From NCBI RefSeq assembly GCF_001194135.2, contig NC_069008.1:17744054-17782316 (forward strand): 38,263 bases of DNA, written 5' to 3'. The notes beneath the pieces were generated by a model. It made no database searches and had not been told where the DNA came from. It saw only the letters and a program-made list of their open reading frames with translations. Origin of the DNA: Octopus bimaculoides (taxonomy: Eukaryota). Both the position numbers and the translations under genes were made by a program. Below are positions 2,284 to 38,263 of the stretch, in pieces (position 1 is the stretch's first letter; each line of letters opens with the position of its first letter).

Positions 2284-2691
2284 AGGCGTAGGAGTGGCTG
2301 TGTGGTAAGTAGCTAGCTTACCAACCACATGGTCCCGGGTTCAGTCCCACTGCGCGGCACCTTGGGCAAGTGTTTTCTACTATAGCCTCGGGCCGACCAA
2401 AGCCTTGTGAGTGGATTTGGTAGACGGAAACTGAAAGAAGCCCGTCGTATATATATATATATGTATGTGTGTGTGTATGTTTGTATGTGTGTGTTTGTCC
2501 CCCCAACATCGCTTGACAACCGATGCTGGTGTATTTATGTCCCCGTAACTTAGCGGTTCGGCAAAAGAGACCGATAGAATAAGTACTAGGCTTCTAAAGA
2601 ATAAGTCCTGGGGTCGATTTGCTCGACTAAAAGGCGGTGCTCCAGCATGGCCACAGTCAAAAGACTGAAACAAGTAAAAGAGTAAAAGAGT
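2284..2691 (+). mobile_element. Full-length tRNA-derived SINE family A (reference copy in this window)
   Basis: Pol III box A-like TGGCTGTGTGG, box B-like GGTTCAGTCCC, central domain, internal TA/TG microsatellite, 3' body and GTAAAAGA-repeat tail; more than 15 related copies in the window. Confidence 0.92.
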
Positions 2692-3649: not shown

Positions 3650-3877
3650 TTGGCACCTGTGCCAGTGGCATGTAAACGCACCCCAGTGTCATGCAAATGG
3701 CATGTAAAAAGCACCCATTACACTCTTGGGGTGGTTGCTATTAAGGAGGGCATCCAGCCGTAGGATACCATGCCACATCAGACTGGAGTCTGGTGCAGCC
3801 TTCCAGTGTGCCAGCCCGATCAAGCTGTCCGACCCATGCCAGCATGGACAGTGGAGGTTAAATGATGATGTTGATGA
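3650..3877 (+). mobile_element. RTE LINE 3' UTR fragment with ATG-repeat tail
   Basis: aaggagggcatccagcc ... acccatgccagcatgg ... gttaaatgatgatg, homologous to 17960-18056. Confidence 0.8.
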
Positions 3878-4991: not shown

Positions 4992-5316
4992 TATTTTATT
5001 TGTTTCAGTCATTTGACTGCAGCCATGCTAGAGCACCACCTTTAGTCAAGTAAATCGACTTCAGGACTTATTCTTTGTTAGCCTAGTACTTATTCTATCG
5101 GTATCTTTTTGCCAAACTGCTAAGGTATGGGAACATAAACACACCAACAAATATATATATATAGGACGAGCTTCTTTCGGTTTCCATCTACCAAATCCAC
5201 CCACAAGTCTTTGGTTGGCCTGTGGGTATAGAAGACACTTGCTCAAGGTGCTACGCAGTGGGACTGGACCCAGAACCATGTGGTTGGGAAGCAAGCTTCT
5301 TACCACACAGCCACTG
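4992..5316 (-). mobile_element. Near full-length SINE family A
   Basis: Tail, body, central domain and head all align in reverse complement to 2284-2691. Confidence 0.9.
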
Positions 5317-5432
5317 TGCAGTTAAAGTGCAACAACATAAGTAATTAGAACTCCACGTGTTTGTTTGTACATCGAGAAATAGGAAAATGCAAAGAGAATC
5401 TGTGTTGTTTTTTCATTGAACTTGGTGACTGC

Positions 5433-7177: not shown

Positions 7178-7362
7178 ATCATCATCATCATCATCATCGT
7201 TTAACGTCCGCTTTCCATGCTAGCATGGGTTGGACGATTTGACTGAGGACTGGTGAAACCGGATGGCAACACCAGGCTCCAGTCTAATTTGGCAGAGTTT
7301 CTACAGCTGGATGCCCTTCCTAACGCCAACCACTCGGAGAGTGTAGTGGGTGCTTTTACGTG
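7178..7362 (-). mobile_element. Young RTE LINE 3' end, runs into an assembly gap
   Basis: (CAT)n tail plus cgtttaacgtccgctttccatgctagcatgg...ggatgcccttcctaacgccaacc; 3 mismatches in about 165 nt versus 25761-25941. Confidence 0.9.
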
Positions 7363-8678: not shown

Positions 8679-9170
8679 GTGCAGGTACCATAGGTGGGGG
8701 ACAGTCCGTGCAGGTACTATGAATGGGGGACGGTCAGTGCAAGTACCATGAATGGGGGACGGTCCGTGTAGGTACCATGAATAGGGACGGTCCGTGCAGG
8801 TACCATGATTGGGGATGGTCCGTGCAGGTACCATGAATAGGGACGGTCCGTGCAGGTACCATGAATGGGGATGGTCCGTGTAGATACTATGATTGGCGAC
8901 GGTCCATGTAGGTACTATGATTGGCGACGGTCCATGTAGGTACTATGATTGGGGACAGTCCGTGCAGGTACCATGAATGGGAGATGGTCCGTGCAGGTAC
9001 CATGAATGGGGATGGTCNNNNNNNNNNNNNNNNNNNNNNNNNNNCGTGCAGGTACCATGAATGGGAGATGGTCCGTGCAGGTACCATGAATGGGGATGGT
9101 TTGTGCAGGTACCATGAATGGGAGATGGTCCGTGCAGGTACCATGAATGGGGATGGTCTGTGCAGGTACC
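8679..9170. repeat. 28/29-bp minisatellite (VNTR), about 17 units, consensus CGTGCAGGTACCATGAATGGG(A)GATGGTC
   Basis: Units visible directly; contains a 27-nt N gap; right-hand units alternate 29/28 bp. Confidence 0.95.
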
Positions 9171-9174
9171 TTAC

Positions 9175-9200
9175 CTCATCTTAAATCTACAGTTAAGCAC
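9175..9200 (-). CDS. Candidate 26-nt microexon GTGCTTAACTGTAGATTTAAGATGAG (VLNCRFKM + AG; phase 0-2)
   Basis: Strong acceptor tgttttatgtgttttcttcaattgcag| and strong donor GAG|GTAAGG. Only one frame is open and it is phase-compatible with the 6163-5942 exon. Confidence 0.45.
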
Positions 9201-9250
9201 CTGCAATTGAAGAAAACACATAAAACAGTATATTATTTTGGTTATTTTTG

Positions 9251-9303
9251 ATAATAATAATAATAATAATAATAACAACATTATTATTATTATTATTATT
9301 ATT
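9251..9303. repeat. Inverted microsatellite (AAT)n-AACAAC-(ATT)n, a perfect 23-bp hairpin
   Basis: 9251-9273 is the reverse complement of 9280-9302. Confidence 0.9.
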
Positions 9304-10549
9304 GCATGGCAGTGGTATAAATGAGCCAGTATTTTCAGATGGCAAATATTAGGATGCGAGAGTACACGATACAAGAGTAGGAGCAAGAAAGATGAGGAAA
9401 ACAGGAATGTAGCAGGATGGAAGGAGCAACAGGGGGGGGGCTGAGACACAGGGCCTACAACGCGAGAGGGGAGAAGGGACAGAACAAGGTGGGGAGTACT
9501 GTGAGGCGTGATGGGAGGCTACAAAGTGTGAAGGTGGCTGATGAAGAGCGGTGGGGGGTGGGGGGCACAAAGCGCCATAAGGAACCCAACAGAGCACAAA
9601 ATGAAGTGCTAGGGGGACAACAAAATGAAGTGCTAGGGGACAACAAAGCAAAAGGGGCCAATGGGGGTGGAAGGAGTCTGAAATAAAAAAGATTTGTTTA
9701 AAAGCTGCACAGCAACAGATAAACCACAAAATAGTGCCACGACGACAGCTATGGGCAGCCCATTTCTGAGGCACGGGCCACAGGAGGCGTGGCTCATCAT
9801 CTGATGGACCACACTAATATTAAAAATTTTAATAACCATTTTCTTCGTGAAATTAAGTGTGTCATTCAGAAACTCAAATAGGTCGCAGTTTGCTTGTGGT
9901 TGTCCTATGCCATCCCTCGATCTGCAAGAAATAGCAGTTAAATCCCTTGTCCCATTCTTACTGTCTTAAGAAAGGAACAAGATTTTTGTATCTAGCAGAG
10001 TATAGCCCTGAGCATATTGTGCTTGGAAATAAGATTGGAAAGTGAGGGCTGGTTAACAACAAGGAAGGAACTTGTGTTCATCTTAATGTGCTCTGTATAT
10101 CGTAATTAGTAACACTACTAAGTGCAGTGATTGACTAAAGCACTAAAGTGGAAGCTGACTGGAGGATGATAGTCTATGTGGAGCTCTAACTCAAATGGTA
10201 GTTGTCATACATCTAACTGTACACACAAGATGTAAATACTTACTTTATAGGTTGGATATTGTTGTTTGGGAGAGAGAGAGAGGGTAAGAGAGAGAGTAAG
10301 AGAGAGAAAGTAAGAGAAAGAGAGTAAGAGAGAAAATGAGAGAGGGTGAATAAGTAAGAGAGACAGAGTAACAGAGAGAGAGGATAAATGAGGGAGTGTT
10401 TGAATGTAGAGTAATAAGAATGGGGGAAGAGAGAGAGAGAGAGAGGGAGGAAAGGGTGGCGTAGCAGTGGGGTGGGTGGGTCTAGATAAGTACCACACTA
10501 ACGGGGAGGGTGGTCGGGTGGTGGGTACCTGGTATCTAGAGCTCTCTAA

Positions 10550-24680: not shown

Positions 24681-24867
24681 TACAGCAATCCTGAGTGAGT
24701 GGACCAATCAAATGTGTCCAAGCCTTGACCACCCCATCTGCTGTTAAGGCATAGTGCATCTAGGACTACATAATCTAATGTGTGATTTCTGGTACCTTAC
24801 CTCCAAGACCAGCCCTGATCCAGCAGACCTCCAAATATGACCATCTTGTCATATCTTAATAAAAGGA

Positions 24868-24954
24868 ACAGGAGTGGCTGTGTGGAAAGAAGCTTGCTTG
24901 CTAACCACATGGTCCCGGGTTCAGTCCTACTGCATGGCACCTTGGGCAAATGTC

Positions 24955-25014
<60 letters not shown>

Positions 25015-25243
25015 GATGTATGTATTTGTGTGTGTGTGTTTGGATACATATTTGTCTCCCCACCATCGCTTGGCAACTGATGTTGGTTGTGTTTAGGTCC
25101 CTGTAACTTAACAGTTCAGCAAAAGAGACCGATAGAATAACTACTAGGCTTACAAAGAATAAGTCCTGGAGTCAATTTCTTCAACTAAAGATGATGCTCC
25201 AGCATGGCCGTAGTCAAATGACAAACAAGTAAAAGAGTAAAAG
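24868..25243 (+). mobile_element. SINE family A with the central domain deleted
   Basis: Head and 3' body are present, joined by an expanded (TA)n. Confidence 0.88.
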
Positions 25244-25760: not shown

Positions 25761-25989
25761 TCATCATCATCATCATCGTTTAACGTCCGCTTTCCATGCT
25801 AGCATGGGTTGGACGGTTTGACTGAGGACTGGTGAAACCGGATGGCAACACCAGGCTCCAGTCTGATTTGGCAGAGTTTCTACAGCTGGATGCCCTTCCT
25901 AACGCCAACCACTCAGAGAGTGTAGTGGGTGCTTTTACGTGTCACCCGCACGAAAACGGCCACGCTCGAAATGGTGTCTTTTATGTGCC
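25761..25989 (-). mobile_element. Young RTE LINE 3' end, runs into an assembly gap
   Basis: About 98% identical to 7178-7362. Confidence 0.9.
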
Positions 25990-26433
25990 NNNNNNNNNNN
26001 NNNNNNNNNNNNNNNNNNNNNNNNNNNNNNNNNNNNNNNNNNNNNNNNNNNNNNNNNNNNNNNNNNNNNNNNNNNNNNNNNNNNNNNNNNNNNNNNNNNN
26101 NNNNNNNNNNNNNNNNNNNNNNNNNNNNNNNNNNNNNNNNNNNNNNNNNNNNNNNNNNNNNNNNNNNNNNNNNNNNNNNNNNNNNNNNNNNNNNNNNNNN
26201 NNNNNNNNNNNNNNNNNNNNNNNNNNNNNNNNNNNNNNNNNNNNNNNNNNNNNNNNNNNNNNNNNNNNNNNNNNNNNNNNNNNNNNNNNNNNNNNNNNNN
26301 NNNNNNNNNNNNNNNNNNNNNNNNNNNNNNNNNNNNNNNNNNNNNNNNNNNNNNNNNNNNNNNNNNNNNNNNNNNNNNNNNNNNNNNNNNNNNNNNNNNN
26401 NNNNNNNNNNNNNNNNNNNNNNNNNNNNNNNNN

Positions 26434-26887: not shown

Positions 26888-27560
26888 TTAAAGGCTGTAT
26901 ATGGTTATGGTGCAGCCACACTTGGAATTTGCATCACCTGTCTGGAACCCCTATCTTGCTCAGAACATTGACCTCCTGGAAACTGTTCAGAAGCATCTAC
27001 CATAGGCATCTACCACATTCTAAACGCCTTGCTTCCCTACATTGAAGCTCCGACGTCTGGCAACTGACTTAGTAAACACCCACAAAATTATTAACCACCT
27101 TGAGCACTTTTTTGAAGCTCCATGTGTCTAATACACATGTGGGCATGCTCTACAAAGTCAGAAAACAGCACAGCTCCCATGACTTTCAGAAACATTTCTT
27201 CACACTCAGAGTCGCTGAAGCATGGAACAAACTACCAGCATCAGTTGTTAGTTGCCAAGACATTGCTTCCTTTAAATCCTCCATGTTGCCTGAAATTCAC
27301 CAACACAAAACATGATATCCCCCCCACCCGCCACTCCATACGCATGCACACCTGTCTGTCATGACTCTTACACTTTCCTGACTTTTGCGCATGATTCTGT
27401 CCTGTAGATGCACCTTTGATGAGTTGTGGTGCACCTGAGCACTATACACAATCATTTCATTGTTATAAGGTAAAACAATATTTGCGAGATTCTTTACTTG
27501 TGTGTTGAAGCTTAGTTTGTTGTGTCTGGGGAGAGTCATTCTGTTTTAACGTCTTATTAA
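26888..27560 (+). mobile_element. 5'-truncated CR1-clade LINE (RT-ORF C-terminus plus 3' UTR), frameshifted
   Basis: RLYMVMVQPHLEFASPVWNPYLAQNIDLLETVQK / RHLPHSKRLASL / LKLRRLATDLVNTHKII / HFFTLRVAEAWNKLPASVVSCQDIASFK. PHLEYASPVW, RRLxxDL and FFxxRVxxxWNxLP are CR1/L2-group C-terminal motifs. Confidence 0.9.
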
Positions 27561-27561
27561 T

Positions 27562-27595
<34 letters not shown>

Positions 27596-27954
27596 GTTCA
27601 GTTTCCACTCATTTACTTAGAAAAAGAAAAACGTAGCTCCTACAACAAACAGAGTCAACAACTATTGAAGAGGTTGCAAGAAACAATGAAAATTTGTATA
27701 AAAACAAAAAAGTAAACGAGTGGAAATTGAACCAGTGTGTGTGTTAATTAAGAAAGCATTAACACACGACTCGCTCCAGACATAAATAATTAAAACAATA
27801 CCTTTTCTCATTATAGACATCGCTTTGCATAGTTTACCTAACTTCCTACCTGCATTGCTCAAAAGATGTTTTATCAAACGCTCGTCTCATATACTGCAAT
27901 GCTTCAAACAAATTATCATACACTTTTGAAAGTAAATAAAGTGGAAAAACTCAC

Positions 27955-28022
27955 TGATTCCATGTGGAAAAAGAACAACGGAATTAATGAAAGGTAGGGA
28001 AGAGCCAATTGGATGTACTCAC
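27955..28022 (-). other. AG|GT recursive-splice-site-like junction (28023/28022) with a 68-nt candidate RS-exon
   Basis: Minus strand reads ctaat-ccgttttccttttctttcttttacag|GTGAGT. A second donor TCA|GTGAGT is at 27954 and a third, CAG|GTAGGA, at 27849. An ATG at 27963-27961 gives ATG GAA TCA before the second donor. Confidence 0.5.
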
Positions 28023-28119
28023 CTGTAAAAGAAAGAAAAGGAAAACGGATTAGATAATAGAAATATTAATTATATAGACAGGTGTGATCTAATGATAAAC
28101 AAGTAAAAGACAAAAGCTA

Positions 28120-28207
28120 CAGTGAAAGACAGTTGCCCAAGACGAGGTGCCACGCAGTGAGACTGAACCACAACATTAAGAAGCAAACTTCTTAACCAAA
28201 CAGCCAT
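28120..28207 (-). mobile_element. SINE family A head fragment
   Basis: ttgcccaag...ggtgccacgcagtgagactgaacc...aagcaaacttcttaacc. Confidence 0.8.
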
Positions 28208-28367
28208 TTTTTTTTCTTCGTTTTGATATTTTTTCTAGTCCCCCATCCCCCCTCTTTCATATTTCCCATCCTCACCCACGGAGCAATTTTTAATTAATTA
28301 TAAATGTCTGACCTCTTGCATTAAAAATATGTCATTCCCTATTTAAATAATTACCACACTGTCTTAG

Positions 28368-28595
28368 TTGCATTATGTTAGTGACAGAACCAACGAGAAT
28401 AACAGCACCAACAACATCATGTCCACAGATTCTAACCAGATGCTGGGACAAACCGAAGTTGGCACCATCTGCAAAGACTTGGGATGGGTAGCATTGGCCA
28501 TGGTGGTGGGGTTGCTTTTTTTTTTTTTATCTTGTGTGATTATATTTCTGGCTGTCAAGAATAAGAAAACAAAATTCATGGAAAAGAGAAAATAA
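28368..28595 (+). CDS. Candidate terminal coding exon (or 58-aa microprotein from MSTDS) of a single-pass membrane protein: N/S/T-rich stalk, TM helix, basic tail
   Basis: The ORF starts exactly after acceptor cactgtcttag| in phase 0. It reads LHYVSDRTNENNSTNNIMSTDSNQMLGQTEVGTICKDLG-WVALAMVVGLLFFFLSCVIIFLAV-KNKKTKFMEKRK*, with N-glycosylation sequons (NNS/NST), a 24-aa hydrophobic helix and a positive-inside tail. AATAAA overlaps the stop. Caveat: the FFF stretch comes from a T13 run. Confidence 0.5.
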   Translation: MHYVSDRTNENNSTNNIMSTDSNQMLGQTEVGTICKDLGWVALAMVVGLLFFFLSCVIIFLAVKNKKTKFMEKRK

Positions 28596-28598
28596 ATG

Positions 28599-28877
28599 TT
28601 AGGCGCTGGCACGTCTGTGTGGTAAGAAGCTTGCTTCCAAGCCACATGGTTCTGTGTTCAGTCTCGCGGTGTGGCACTTCAGGAAAGTGTTTTCTATTAT
28701 AGTTTTGTGCCGACCAAAGCCTTGTGAGTGGATTTGGTAGACAGAAACTGAAAGAAGCCCATTGTGTGTGTGAAGACCCATAACAGTTCAGCTGAATAGA
28801 CTGATAAGTACTAGGCTTCAAAAGAATAAGTCCTGGGGTCGATTTGTTTGACTAAAACCCTTCAAAGTGGTGCCCCG
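28599..28877 (+). mobile_element. SINE family A (internally deleted), starting 3 nt after the TM-ORF stop
   Basis: Head, central domain and partial 3' body. Confidence 0.88.
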
Positions 28878-28883
28878 AAGAAA

Positions 28884-29440
28884 GAAAGGTGGACATGGTT
28901 AGCCATGGCGAGAACGTCCATGGAAAAAGGCAGACATGGTTAGCCATGGCGAGAACGTCCATGGAAAAAGGCGGACATGGTTAGCCATGGCGAGAATGTC
29001 CATGGAAAAGCTTAATAACATCTGGAGCAGCAAAAGGTGTCCCAACTCATTTAAAAACAAGGCTGGTGCAGGCATTTGTTTGGCCTGCAAGCTTTTATGC
29101 CTGGGCTTTGAACAGATTTGAACATAATGTGTTTGAGGTGTGAGTGAACAGGAGGATGATATGTGTCACTTAGAAGGGCCATTGGACAAATGGACGAGTG
29201 TTACAAGAAGAAGGGGAAAGACGAGAACAAGTGAACAATGTGGATAAACAAAAGCTCATCTGTTATGGTCATACTTGAAGGAGGTGAGTTCTGAAAAACT
29301 ATCATGGAAGGAAGGGCTGAGGGTAAGTAGATCAAGGGGCAGGCAAAGAATGCAAAGGATGGACAATATCATGAGAGGGTTGGATAAGAGTGGCAAGGAA
29401 GATGGAGAACTAGAGATTAATAGGGAAGACTAGACTGTAA
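28884..29440 (+). mobile_element. Old RTE-group LINE C-terminal remnant (a different family from 17583) with a 41-bp triplication at its 5' end
   Basis: Across frameshifts: RRTWLAMARMSMEKLNNIWSSK...KTRLVQAFVWP...KQKLICYGH...KTIMEGRAEG...SRGRQRM, matching the RTE pattern RRIAMA...KL..IW...YFGH...IMEGKxEGxRxRGRQR. Confidence 0.75.
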
Positions 29441-30327: not shown

Positions 30328-30627
30328 GTGAGTATTGGTGTCACTATGGCACCAGCACAGTAAGAGGTGGCGGGGGAGGCCTTTCACACAATATATCAAG
30401 TACTGAGGAATGTAAGGTGTGTGGACAAAGTGGGGGGGGGGATTGAGAGAGAACAATGAAAGCAGGAAAATGAGAAATGTGTGATTAAGGAGGGGTGCAA
30501 CAATGGGTGAACTCAATATACTCAAAAATCGGGTCGCATGCACAGGTTGGTCAGATGATTAAGGAAGGGGAATAGTGAAAAGGAGTAATGACATCAGCAA
30601 GACCAGGACAGGTGGGTGGTGTCATTG

Positions 30628-30835
30628 TCATCATCATCATCGTTTAACGTCCGTTTTCCATGCTGGCATGGGTTGGACGGTTCGACTGGGGTCTGGGAAG
30701 CGCCAGGAGGCTGCACCAGGCTCCAATCTGATCTGGCAGTGTTTCTACAGCTGGATGCCCTTCCTAACGCCAACCACTCCGAGAGTGTAGCGAGTGCTTT
30801 TTATGTGCCACTGACACAGGGGCCAGAGGAGCTGG
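30628..30835 (-). mobile_element. RTE LINE 3' end, sister subfamily
   Basis: (CAT)n cgtttaacgtccgttttccatgctggcatgg...ctacagctggatgcccttcctaacgccaaccactcc. Confidence 0.88.
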
Positions 30836-31469
30836 CATCAACCCTGATCGGAATTGATCCACTTGACTAAAAATTCTTCAAGGCAGTGCCCCAGTATGGT
30901 CGCAGTCTAATTACTGAAACAGATTAAAGATAACAAGATAAAGCGGTGCCAGTTTTGGAAACCTGAAGAAACCAAATATCTTGTTACAGACTGAAGAACG
31001 AAGTCCAAAATTAAACCAAAATCCAGAATGGTTCTGAAGCTGTTTTTCTCTAAGAATTCTTTTGGAGGCCAACAGATAAAAACTCTATTTTTATGGAAGA
31101 AAAATGCGCAATGTTTATAGAATGGTGGTTTGTGATGGAAGGGAGGTTTGGCGTATAATGGACAATGGTTTATTAATGCTGGAGTGGCATGGATGGGTGG
31201 GTGTGATGGGGTGTCTTCAGATAACTTATAGACTATCTTTGAACATAGGTTACTGTTTCTTGTCTGTACCAAAGATGGACAGACACCCTCTATATGTATA
31301 CACACACATATATAGATACACACATCTACACACACAACTATACACATATATAGACACATCTACACACACATATACAGACATCTACACACACATATACAGA
31401 CACATCTACACACACACATATACAGACACATCTACACACATCTACAGACACATGCACATATATAGACAC

Positions 31470-33764: not shown

Positions 33765-34663
33765 TTCTATCTTTTACGTGTTTCAGTCATTTGCCTGTGG
33801 CCATGCTGGGGCACCACCTTCGAGGGTTTTAGTCAAAGAAATCAACCCTGGTACTTGTTTTTTTTCTTCTCTTTACATTTGTTTCAGTGATTTGACTGTG
33901 GCCATGCTGGAGCAATGCCTTCAGTCGAACAAATCGACCCCAGGACTTATTCCTTGTTGAGCCTAGCACTTATTCTATCAGTCACTTTTGCCAAACCGCT
34001 TAGTTACGGGGAAGTAAACACAACAACATCGGTTGTCAAGTAGTGGGGGAGGACAAACATACACACACGATGGGCTTCTTTCAGTTTCCATCTCCCAAAC
34101 CCACTCCCAAAGCTTTGGTCAGGCCGAGGTTATAGTAGAAGACACTTGCCCAAGGTGCCACGCAGTGGGACTGAACCTGGAACCATGTGGTTGGTAAGCA
34201 AGCTTCTCACCACACACACATATGTTCTTTTACTTGTTTCAGTCATTTGCCTGTGGCCTTGCTGGAGCCCCACCTTTAGTCAAACAAATCAACTCCAGGA
34301 CTTATTCTTTGTAAGCCTAGTACTCACTCTATCAGTCTCTTTTGCCAACCGCTAAGTTACAGGGATGTAAACACAGCAACATTGGCTGTCAAGCAATGGT
34401 GGGGGGACAAGCACAGAAACACACACAAATATATACACATATATATACAACAGGCTTCATTCAGTCTCCATCTACAAAATCCACTAGTGTTTAACAGCCA
34501 TTGTTGCTGTGTTTAATTCCTCGTAACTTAGCACTTTAGCAAAAAGACACTGATAGAATAAATATCAGGCCTGAAGGGGGTTGATTTGTTTAACTAAAAT
34601 CCTTCAAGGGGGTGCCCCAGCATGGCCACAGTCTAACGACTGAAACAAGTAAAAGAGTAAAAG
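33765..34663. mobile_element. Cluster of four SINE family A copies: minus 33765-33858, minus 33868-34215 (near full length), minus 34224-34487, plus 34503-34663
   Basis: Each aligns to 2284-2691; the last two are inverted with respect to each other. Confidence 0.88.
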
Positions 34664-34930: not shown

Positions 34931-36171
34931 TGTGCCATGGAGGTGGTTGCTCTCCGCAAGCCTCAAACCTTTTAAAATGATTTAAAAAAAAAAAATTCAA
35001 TGTATTTGTGGGGTGTTGGGTGGCTGGCGGGTGGATTTTAGATAGCGTTTTCTGTCAGGGCTGAATTTTTGCACAGGTAGGTTTATGTCATATACATGCA
35101 GGAGGTTATAACCCCAGATACTTAGTAACAGCTTGTTGAGCACTTAAATGAAAAAAGATTATTTTGTGATGCTCATGTATATCTAGTTACATCCTTGTNN
35201 NNNNNNNNNNNNNNNNNNNNNNNNNNNNNNNNNNNNNNNNNNNNNNNNNNNNNNNNNNNNNNNNNNNNNNNNNNNNNNNNNNNNNNNNNNNNNNNNNNNN
35301 NNNNNNNNNNNNNNNNNNNNNNNNNNNNNNNNNNNNNNNNNNNNNNNNNNNNNNNNNNNNNNNNNNNNNNNNNNNNNNNNNNNNNNNNNNNNNNNNNNNN
35401 NNNNNNNNNNNNNNNNNNNNNNNNNNNNNNNNNNNNNNNNNNNNNNNNNNNNNNNNNNNNNNNNNNNNNNNNNNNNNNNNNNNNNNNNNNNNNNNNNNNN
35501 NNNNNNNNNNNNNNNNNNNNNNNNNNNNNNNNNNNNNNNNNNNNNNNNNNNNNNNNNNNNNNNNNNNNNNNNNNNNNNNNNNNNNNNNNNNNNNNNNNNN
35601 NNNNNNNNNNNNNNNNNNNNNNNNNNNNNNNNNNNNNNNNNNNNNNNNNNNNNNNNNNNNNNNNNNNNNNNNNNNNNNNNNNNNNNNNNNNNNNNNNNNN
35701 NNNNNNNNNNNNNNNNNNNNNNNNNNNNNNNNNNNNNNNNNNNNNNNNNNNNNNNNNNNNNNNNNNNNNNNNNNNNNNNNNNNNNNATATATATATATAT
35801 ATATATATATATAATGAGACACATAAAGCCAGGGTAGTCACGACTGGAATGTCCTTTGATCCTGAGTGGACCTGATGAGGTCTGATCAAGGGTTAAACAA
35901 CATCAACCACAAAGAGCCCTTACATTCACTTTCCTCTGTCTCTCCTCCCACCATCACCCCAGCTGGTCTCATCCCTTTCACCTTCCTCTTCTCTCTTTCC
36001 TTCCACCCCAGATCCATACCACACCCTTATACTGCCCACCCCCACCCTGAATCCATTTGCTTTTTTTTCTCTTTCTTTCTTTCCTAAGGTAATAAATATT
36101 AATATATTGCTAAATCGAGACAGGGTGGGTCTGATATCGGACAGATGGACGGACAGACAGGGACACGCCGT

Positions 36172-38104: not shown

Positions 38105-38263
38105 ATATGAGAGAGAGAGACAGAAAGAGAGAGATGGAGAGAGAGAGAGATGGAGAGAGAGAGAGATGGAGAGAGGGAGAGATGGAGAGAGAGAGAGATG
38201 GAGAGAGAGAGAGATGGAGAGAGAGAGAGAGGGAGAGAGAGAGATGGAGAGAGAGAGATGGGG
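38105..38263. repeat. (GA)n/GATG compound repeat (GACA/GATG repeats also at 36170-36780)
   Basis: Direct inspection. Confidence 0.9.

What the first reader, a model, noticed from the sequence alone, without database searches (positions are those of the whole stretch)
27849..28055. Ratchet-point (recursive splicing) architecture on the minus strand, with a 68-nt RS-exon
Seen: the minus strand has a branch-like CTAAT, a ~21-nt polypyrimidine tract and CAG followed with zero spacing by a perfect GTGAGT (junction 28023/28022). A weaker second donor (TCA|GTGAGT) lies 68 nt downstream and a third (CAG|GTAGGA) 173 nt downstream. Established: fused AG|GT sites followed by a short cryptic exon are how Drosophila ratchet points and vertebrate RS-exons subdivide very long introns. 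Inference: this window is part of a giant intron of a minus-strand gene that is removed in steps. I know of no description of this in cephalopods, whose genes have very long, repeat-filled introns, but I have not checked the literature.
Basis: partly seen in the sequence, partly recalled or inferred. Interest (0 to 1): 0.75.

Follow-up and report, generated by a model that had tools for sequence, protein, structure and literature searches.

The report
Fused splice-site motif, function unproven
The minus strand really does carry a textbook acceptor fused to a textbook donor, as at recursive splice sites of flies and vertebrates, but about a hundred equally good sites are expected by chance in a genome this size and nothing reachable here shows that this one is transcribed, conserved or used.

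Summary
On the minus strand there is CTAAT (branch A at -28), a 19-nt unbroken pyrimidine run (19 of 20 Y), then CAG|GTGAGT with the junction at 28023/28022. TCA|GTGAGT lies 68 nt downstream and CAG|GTAGGA 173 nt downstream.

It is the best fused acceptor/donor in the window, and its donor 9-mer ranks first of 4,773 GT sites. About 0.002 sites of this quality are expected per window. That is roughly one per 20 Mb, or about 100 by chance in a 2.7-2.8 Gb genome, and about 10 that also have a GTRAGT 30-200 nt downstream.

The interpretation (a giant minus-strand intron removed in steps) could not be tested:
- No coding exon or Pfam domain was found on either strand in 38 kb.
- No ORF near the site is in the protein or contig collections.
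- No orthologous sequence or RNA data were reachable.
- The organism could not be confirmed.

The site lies in repeat-rich non-coding DNA, 91 nt from a truncated SINE and next to a strong foldback.

My estimates are a fortuitous, unused motif about 0.55, a real recursive site about 0.2, and an ordinary unannotated exon boundary about 0.15. It is a reasonable candidate, not a finding.

The parts
28049..28053 (-). Branch-point-like CTAAT; the candidate branch A at 28050 is 28 nt upstream of the junction
   Evidence: It lies inside the -36 to -21 window reported for fly ratchet-point branch points. This is a sequence match only; usage is untested.
28027..28049 (-). Polypyrimidine tract tccgTTTTCCTTTTCTTTCTTTT: 19 unbroken Y, 22 of 23 overall, TT at -5/-6, no AG before the acceptor
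   Evidence: Only 1.3% of 20-mers on this strand reach 19/20 Y. It looks like a short (CTTT)n-type low-complexity run; on the + strand it reads as an A-rich stretch.
28017..28025 (-). Fused acceptor/donor CAG|GTGAGT, junction between 28023 and 28022
   Evidence: Best joint PWM of 235 AGGT sites. Donor 9-mer ranked 1 of 4,773 GT. Expected 0.0017 per window.
27955..28022 (-). 68-nt segment that would be the cryptic RS-exon. Its length is not a multiple of 3, it has stops in 2 of 3 frames, and the open frame reads EYIQLALPYLSLIPLFFFHMES
   Evidence: A 49-aa ORF containing that peptide has no relative among 5.8 billion protein clusters.
27949..27954 (-). Second donor-like GTGAGT preceded by TCA. 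The intronic half is as good as the first donor but the exonic half is poor
   Evidence: full 9-mer 1.3 bits, rank 306; intronic half 5.2 bits, equal to the first donor. The chance of a GTRAGT 30-200 nt downstream is about 0.10.
27844..27849 (-). Third donor-like CAG|GTAGGA, 173 nt from the junction. The 173-nt segment is closed in all three frames
   Evidence: 9-mer 5.4 bits, rank 26.
28113..28217 (-). Context: truncated 5' fragment (model positions 2-107 of 351) of the window's abundant SINE, same orientation as the motif, ending 91 nt upstream of the junction
   Evidence: nhmmer with an HMM built from six window copies, E = 3.6e-13. No SINE similarity extends over the motif.
27521..27782 (.). 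Context: strong foldback (inverted repeat with an (AC)15 run in one arm), starting about 60 nt beyond the third donor
   Evidence: arms 94% complementary. RNA fold -94.2 kcal/mol, z = -7.0.

Best explanation
The motif is most likely a fortuitous, splice-competent-looking juxtaposition in repeat-rich non-coding DNA. A short CT-rich low-complexity run ends in CAG and happens to be followed by GTGAGT. No biological use has been demonstrated.

Shown: the motif exists and is the best of its kind in the window. The surrounding 38 kb has no detectable coding exon. The motif sits between a truncated SINE and a foldback in sequence that has no second copy in the window.

Inferred: the rate at which such sites arise by chance (about 100 per genome of this size) is comparable to or larger than the number of real recursive sites of this quality one could expect. 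That range runs from about 20 in mouse brain to more than 500 in Drosophila, of which only a fraction have so extreme a motif.

If the minus strand were transcribed as part of a pre-mRNA, the standard spliceosome would be expected to see this site. It would then behave as a ratchet point or cryptic exon, whether or not selection maintains it.
For: - Chance rate: 0.0017 sites per 34 kb of non-N sequence, hence about 90-140 per 2.7-2.8 Gb, and about 10-14 that also have a downstream GTRAGT.
- AGGTRAGT itself occurs at the frequency predicted by composition (2 seen, about 2 expected).
- Pyrimidine-rich 20-mers are 6-7 times commoner on the minus strand because of CT/GA-type simple repeats.
- No exon-like acceptor-ORF-donor candidate and no Pfam domain in any of 121 non-repetitive ORFs of at least 50 aa, on either strand.
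- No second good fused site in the window.
- In mouse brain only 20 RS sites were found among 28,382 transcribed long introns (PMC8797253).
- The candidate exon has no coding signal.
Against: - For a single 38-kb window the site is improbable (p about 0.002).
- It combines every sequence feature of fly ratchet points: strong Y-tract, TT at -5/-6, branch-like motif at -28, consensus donor, and a short downstream cryptic exon with a second donor.
- The best donor 9-mer of the window coincides with one of its three best Y-tract acceptors.
- The minus strand is T-rich across the window, as sense strands of introns are in other animals (my own knowledge; not established for cephalopods).
- The number of real recursive sites in cephalopods is unknown, so the prior is soft.
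Confidence: 0.55

Rival explanations
1. It is a genuine recursive splice site (ratchet point with a 68-nt cryptic RS-exon) inside a long intron of a minus-strand gene.

Proposed mechanism: U2AF and U2 recognise the Y-tract, the branch A at -28 and the CAG. U1 at the downstream GTGAGT (27954) defines a 68-nt exon. The upstream exon is ligated to 28022, which regenerates a strong donor (exon end|GTGAGT). That donor out-competes the weaker TCA|GTGAGT, so the 68 nt are removed together with the rest of the intron.
For: - Sequence features match the published definition: juxtaposed acceptor/donor, prominent Y-tract, TT at -5/-6 (99.5% of fly RPs), branch point within -36 to -21.
- It has a short cryptic exon with its own donor. 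The exon shifts the frame and carries stops, and the donor competition would be expected to favour the ratchet donor.
- Local improbability is p about 0.002, or about 2e-4 including the second donor.
- At least 38 kb has no detectable exon, and the minus strand is T-rich.
Against: - There is no evidence of transcription, host gene, strand, junction reads or conservation.
- The same features are expected about 10-100 times per genome by chance.
- A frame-shifting, stop-containing 68-mer is also what random sequence gives.
- The AT skew is near zero in the bins around the site.
- Recursive splicing has not been reported in any lophotrochozoan in the searchable library. In mammals fully suppressed intronic sites are very rare.
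Confidence: 0.2
2. It is an ordinary splice site of an unannotated exon, either non-coding, UTR, lncRNA, TE-derived or poison exon. There are two versions. In one, the CAG is the acceptor of a 68- or 173-nt exon that merely happens to begin with GTGAGT. In the other, GTGAGT is the donor of an upstream, SINE-containing non-coding exon that happens to end in a pyrimidine run.
For: - In mouse, 46 of 84 junction-read-supported intronic AG|GT candidates turned out to be unannotated exons, against 19 true RS sites (PMC8797253).
- Thousands of expressed exons in mammals start with a GT donor-like sequence.
- The donor here is the best in the window.
- A SINE fragment in the same orientation lies just upstream. 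TE-derived exons are common (my own knowledge).
Against: - There is no coding signal. Only one frame of the 68-nt segment is open, the 173-nt segment is closed in all frames, and the ORF has no homologue.
- No transcript evidence was reachable.
- The expected number of real exons that begin with GTRAGT behind so extreme a Y-tract is only a handful per genome (my estimate from 168,570 exons, and the rates).
Confidence: 0.15
3. The motif belongs to a transposable element, for example the antisense of an A-rich 3' tail of a plus-strand retroposon, as in antisense-Alu exonisation. It would then recur many times in the genome as part of that element's sequence.
For: - On the + strand the Y-tract reads AAAAGAAAGAAAAGGAAAA, which is tail-like.
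- The neighbourhood is a mosaic of SINE fragments, LINE-like ORF remnants and a foldback.
Against: - 27849-28116 has no other copy within the window.
- No target-site duplication or terminal repeat delimits an element. The only candidate is a 17-nt, 88% inverted repeat at 27777/28294 in AT-rich sequence, which is compatible with chance.
- There was no hit for a 25-mer across the junction in metagenome contigs, which is uninformative because that collection is not expected to hold animal genomes.
Confidence: 0.07

Closest known systems
Drosophila intronic ratchet points (Ubx, kuz, Bx, luna; Hatton 1998, Burnette 2005, Duff 2015, Joseph 2018, Pai 2018)
   Same: - Zero-spacing acceptor|donor around AG|GT.
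- Very strong pyrimidine tract with TT at -5/-6.
- Branch-like motif about 28 nt upstream.
- Consensus-type donor GTGAGT.
- A short downstream cryptic exon (68 nt here, about 50 nt in flies) ending in a second donor, frame-shifting and stop-containing.
   Different: Fly sites are defined by junction reads, sawtooth coverage, lariats and strong conservation, and they lie in introns longer than 11 kb. None of this is known here. Repeats flank the site, whereas fly RPs are islands of conservation.
Vertebrate RS-exons in long neuronal genes (Sibley 2015; Blazquez 2018; mouse brain survey PMC8797253)
   Same: Exon-definition architecture: an AG|GT acceptor plus a downstream 5' splice site, with a poison-type cryptic exon that is skipped when the regenerated donor wins the competition.
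   Different: Vertebrate sites sit in first or second introns longer than 50 kb of genes longer than about 300 kb, are highly conserved, and prefer AGGTAAGT. Gene context and conservation are unknown here, and the donor is GTGAGT.
Cryptic (pseudo-)exons and TE-antisense exonisation (e.g. DMD pseudoexons, antisense Alu)
   Same: A strong acceptor-like site formed by a T-rich run next to repeats, with nearby donor-like GTs and no coding capacity.
   Different: Those cases are recognised because the exon appears in mRNA. Here there is no transcript evidence, and membership of a TE was not shown.

Membership tests
Intronic ratchet point (zero-nt recursive splice site, Drosophila type) | [quoted passage not shown] | tested here: met
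   CAG|GTGAGT with 19/20 Y upstream. Top joint PWM of 235 AGGT sites. Top donor 9-mer of 4,773 GT.
Intronic ratchet point (zero-nt recursive splice site, Drosophila type) | TT at -5/-6 and a branch point 21-36 nt upstream | tested here: met
   t28027 and t28028; CTAAT with A at -28 (criteria). This is a sequence match only. Branch usage is not testable here.
Intronic ratchet point (zero-nt recursive splice site, Drosophila type) | Lies on the sense strand inside a long intron (over 10 kb in flies) | tested here: inconclusive
   No exon or Pfam domain in 38 kb on either strand. This fits a long intron and an intergenic region equally well. The weak T>A excess on the minus strand is about 0 near the site. 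No annotation was reachable.
Intronic ratchet point (zero-nt recursive splice site, Drosophila type) | Exon-to-ratchet junction reads, sawtooth intronic coverage, lariats from the regenerated GT | not testable with these tools
   No RNA-seq access. Look-ups that might have reached transcript contigs found nothing.
Intronic ratchet point (zero-nt recursive splice site, Drosophila type) | Motif conserved well above its flanks in related species | not testable with these tools
   No cephalopod DNA collection is available. The metagenome 25-mer scan gave 0 hits and the protein-based routes were empty.
RS-exon (exon-definition recursive splicing, flies and vertebrates) | Downstream 5' splice site that defines a short cryptic exon | tested here: met
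   GTGAGT at +68 and GTAGGA at +173. The chance of a GTRAGT within 30-200 nt is about 0.10.
RS-exon (exon-definition recursive splicing, flies and vertebrates) | Regenerated donor stronger than the RS-exon donor, so the cryptic exon is skipped | tested here: inconclusive
   The intronic halves are identical (5.2 bits each). In the genomic context the 9-mers score 9.1 against 1.3 bits. The regenerated donor depends on the unknown upstream exon.
RS-exon (exon-definition recursive splicing, flies and vertebrates) | Cryptic exon is out of frame or carries stops | tested here: met
   68 nt = 3x22+2, with stops in 2 of 3 frames. Random non-coding sequence gives the same result, so this does not discriminate.
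Ordinary protein-coding cassette exon | Open frame with detectable relatives or a domain | tested here: not met
   Only a 22-aa open frame. The 49-aa ORF containing it shares no word triplet with any of 5.8 billion clusters. No Pfam hit.
Motif carried by an interspersed repeat | Additional copies of the segment, or similarity to the window's SINE | tested here: not met
   No second copy of 27849-28116 in the window. The SINE HMM alignment stops at 28113. Genome-wide copy number is not testable here.

The most novel reading that the evidence does not exclude
The site is a functional, conserved ratchet point with a 68-nt cryptic RS-exon in a long intron of a minus-strand cephalopod gene. It would be the first recursive splice site described in a lophotrochozoan. 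That would imply that stepwise intron removal at AG|GT sites is shared by all three bilaterian superclades, and is either retained or re-evolved wherever neural genes carry very long introns.
Probability: 0.2. Interest if true: 0.55.

Novelty: not a real feature. Interest (0 to 1): 0.27.

Why it matters
If the site were used, it would extend recursive splicing from insects and vertebrates to molluscs. It would also give a concrete locus for asking how large-brained invertebrates process long neuronal introns. That would be a new member of a known kind, interesting but not surprising, because the mechanism needs only the standard spliceosome.

As it stands, the value is mainly methodological. 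One perfect-looking AG|GT motif does not count as evidence in a genome of about 2.7 Gb, where about 100 are expected by chance. The informative experiment is genome-wide: compare sense against antisense enrichment in long introns and use total RNA-seq. A single locus cannot answer the question.

I chose the label 'not a real feature' because my best explanation is a fortuitous motif. The sequence pattern itself is real. About 0.35 of the probability remains on some splicing role.

Tried and rejected
- **Exact look-ups.** Two ORFs flanking the site (71 aa and 90 aa) are not on record in public assemblies.
- **Homology searches, all three allowed.**
  - A transmembrane-like ORF on the + strand at 28368-28592, which would have argued for a plus-strand exon: no candidate.
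  - The nearest SINE ORF, tried to reach same-locus contigs or a taxon: no candidate.
  - The 49-aa ORF spanning the junction, including the only open frame of the 68-nt segment: no candidate.
- **Cluster look-up.** None of the ten longest ATG ORFs is in the collection.
- **DNA pattern scan.** A 25-mer across the junction has 0 hits in metagenome contigs.
- **Pfam.** Nothing for ten local ORFs. Nothing for all 121 non-repetitive ORFs of at least 50 aa, apart from one sub-threshold TPR hit at E = 0.014.
- **RNA genes.** Rfam and ARAGORN found none.
- **Exon scan.** An acceptor-ORF-donor scan gave one weak candidate in low-complexity sequence at 9175-9454.
- **SINE test.** I tested whether the motif lies inside the adjoining SINE. 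The HMM alignment ends 91 nt away, so this was rejected.
- **MITE test.** I considered a 17-nt inverted repeat (27777/28294) as MITE termini bracketing the motif. It is AT-rich, 88% complementary and has no target-site duplication, so it is compatible with chance.
- **SINE orientation** is mixed and uninformative about the transcribed strand.
- **Taxon.** I could not confirm the organism. Searches for SINE core sequences in the paper library returned nothing. The resemblance of the SINE to octopus repeats rests on my memory only.

Full report
**What is there.** Reading the minus strand confirms every element at the stated positions.
- The sequence runs ...tatCTAATccgTTTTCCTTTTCTTTCTTTTaCAG|GTGAGTacatcc..., with the junction between 28023 and 28022.
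- The branch-like A (28050) is at -28.
- The unbroken pyrimidine run is 19 nt (28045-28027), and positions -5 and -6 are TT.
- TCA|GTGAGT follows 68 nt downstream (GT at 27954) and CAG|GTAGGA 173 nt downstream (GT at 27849).
- The 68-nt segment is not a multiple of three and has stops in two frames. The 173-nt segment is closed in all three frames.

**Is it more than chance?** AGGTRAGT occurs twice in the window on both strands, which is what base composition predicts. Only this copy has a pyrimidine tract (19/20 against 10/20). With simple position weight matrices (consensus frequencies recalled from memory, so approximate), it has by far the best joint acceptor plus donor score of 235 AGGT sites. 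Its donor 9-mer is the best of all 4,773 GT dinucleotides.

I used the real sequence for the tract frequency, because shuffles would destroy the simple repeats that create such tracts. There are 3 YAG sites behind at least 19/20 pyrimidines, including this one. A second-order Markov estimate gives P(GTRAGT|AG) of 5-6e-4. The expectation is therefore 0.0017 fused sites per window, 0.013 at 17/20 and 0.047 at 15/20. A GTRAGT 30-200 nt downstream has p about 0.10.

The site is thus unusual for one window, with the threshold set after the fact. The same rate gives about 90-140 equally good sites by chance in a 2.7-2.8 Gb genome (size from PMC10700109). About 10-14 of those would also have the second donor.

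**Context.** The window is a draft scaffold of a repeat-rich eukaryote.
- It has 13 N gaps, more than 100 tandem-repeat rows and at least 17 fragments of one 351-nt SINE in both orientations.
- It has no Rfam family and no tRNA.
- No ORF looks coding. None of 121 non-repetitive stop-to-stop ORFs of at least 50 aa has a Pfam match. An acceptor-ORF-donor scan found nothing convincing.
- The motif lies in a stretch of about 270 bp (27849-28116) with no other copy in the window.
- That stretch is 91 nt downstream of a truncated SINE head on the same strand (28217-28113, E = 3.6e-13). It is just upstream of a strong foldback (27521-27782; -94 kcal/mol, z = -7).
- Plus-strand ORF remnants at 27076-27312 and 28903-29430 look to me like LINE ORF2 C-termini. 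This is from memory, and Pfam does not confirm it.
- After masking tandem repeats the plus strand has A>T (skew +0.066) in every 4-kb bin. This makes the minus strand T-rich, as intron sense strands are in other animals. The skew is about 0 in the bins around the site, and GC skew is nil. I treat it as a weak hint only.

**Attempts to reach outside evidence.** The tools hold no animal genome or RNA-seq collection that can be searched by DNA. The indirect routes all failed:
- exact look-ups of flanking ORFs;
- three homology searches, including the ORF that contains the only open frame of the 68-nt segment;
- exact cluster look-up of the ten longest ORFs;
- a 25-mer scan of metagenome contigs.

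Transcription, host gene, strand and conservation therefore remain unknown. The organism is not confirmed either.

**Comparison with the known systems.** Fly ratchet points have these features (Duff et al.; Joseph/Lai, PMC8605326):
- juxtaposed acceptor/donor sites with a stronger-than-usual pyrimidine tract;
- TT at -5/-6 in 99.5% of cases;
- branch points at -36 to -21;
- strong conservation;
- location in introns longer than 11 kb;
- a short cryptic exon (about 50 nt) with its own donor, which is recognised first and then skipped because the regenerated donor wins.

The sequence-level features are all met here. Those that need context or data are untested. The intronic halves of the first and second donors are identical (GTGAGT). 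The second has a poor exonic half (TCA), so the competition would plausibly favour the regenerated donor. That depends on an upstream exon that is not known.

Base rates caution against accepting the motif alone:
- In mouse brain only 20 RS sites were found among 28,382 transcribed long introns (PMC8797253).
- In the same study 46 of 84 junction-supported AG|GT candidates were simply unannotated exons.
- Only nine fully suppressed intronic sites were definitively noted in mammals, against more than 500 in flies.
- In lungfish, intron expansion did not bring ubiquitous recursive splicing.
- Median octopus introns are about 2.5 kb, so giant introns are a minority.

**Weighing.** I compared about 10-14 chance sites per genome having the full architecture with two other classes. 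One is a handful of ordinary exon boundaries that would look the same. The other is an unknown number of real recursive sites of this quality, perhaps 1-10. On that comparison I put a fortuitous unused motif at about 0.55, a genuine recursive site at about 0.2, an ordinary unannotated exon boundary at about 0.15, and a TE-borne motif at about 0.07. These numbers rest on soft priors and should move sharply with the first RNA-seq or cross-species alignment.

**Novelty and verdict.** No paper in the searchable library links recursive splicing with octopus or cephalopods. A confirmed site would therefore be a new member of a known kind in a new phylum. As submitted, the finding is a correct observation with an untested interpretation. 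It is a reasonable candidate for a genome-wide screen, and it is not evidence that cephalopods use recursive splicing.

Noticed in passing
window 27521-27782: Strong foldback. The inverted-repeat arms are 27584-27618 and 27710-27744 (94% complementary), extended by 27542-27573 and 27735-27766, with an (AC)15 run in one arm. The RNA fold is -94.2 kcal/mol, z = -7.0. It could be a MITE-like element, or in a transcript a long dsRNA of the kind ADARs edit.
   Followed up: partly
window 28368-28592 (+): A 75-aa ORF that looks like a single-pass membrane segment: an NNST site, a hydrophobic run of about 24 aa, then KNKKTKFMEKRK and a stop. It ends where a SINE begins. It has no homologue in the protein collection and only sub-threshold Pfam hits. 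It is probably a by-product of a poly-T run.
   Followed up: yes
window-wide, e.g. 2284-2652 (+), 33900-34230 (-), 5021-5319 (-), 24864-25209 (+), 28601-28878 (+): One SINE family of about 351 nt, with a conserved head, a variable microsatellite core and a conserved tail, accounts for at least 17 fragments in both orientations. ARAGORN and Rfam do not recognise its head as a tRNA.
   Followed up: partly
window 28885-29009, with 28903-29430 (+) and 27076-27312 (+): A 41-bp unit repeated 3 times at 95% identity. It is embedded in plus-strand ORF remnants that resemble LINE ORF2 C-termini (motifs like GRQRMQRMDNI... and FFTLRVAEAWNKLP). The identification is from memory, and Pfam gives no hit.
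   Followed up: partly
window ~7253-7362 (+), 25832-25990 (+), 30616-30870 (+), 3689-3760 (-): A second interspersed repeat, recognisable by the translated motif LQLDALPNANHSESV, occurs at least four times.
   Followed up: no
window 8679-9170; 12511-12853; 38109-38258: Three minisatellites: a 28-bp unit x17 (77% matches, interrupted by an N gap), a 107-bp unit x3.3, and a 16-bp GA-rich unit x9.5 at the window edge.
   Followed up: no
whole window: There is a persistent A>T excess on the plus strand: skew +0.10 raw and +0.066 after masking tandem repeats, with the same sign in all ten 4-kb bins and no GC skew. Pyrimidine-rich 20-mers are 6-7 times commoner on the minus strand.
   Followed up: partly
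window 29284 (+): This is the only other AGGTGAGT in the window (GAG|GTGAGT). It has no pyrimidine tract (10/20) and lies inside the LINE-like remnant.
   Followed up: yes
13 N runs, e.g. 15123-15953, 20747-21489, 35199-35786: The assembly gaps are mostly bordered by (TA)n or (AC)n microsatellites. This indicates a short-read scaffolded draft, and about 10% of the window is unknown sequence.
   Followed up: no
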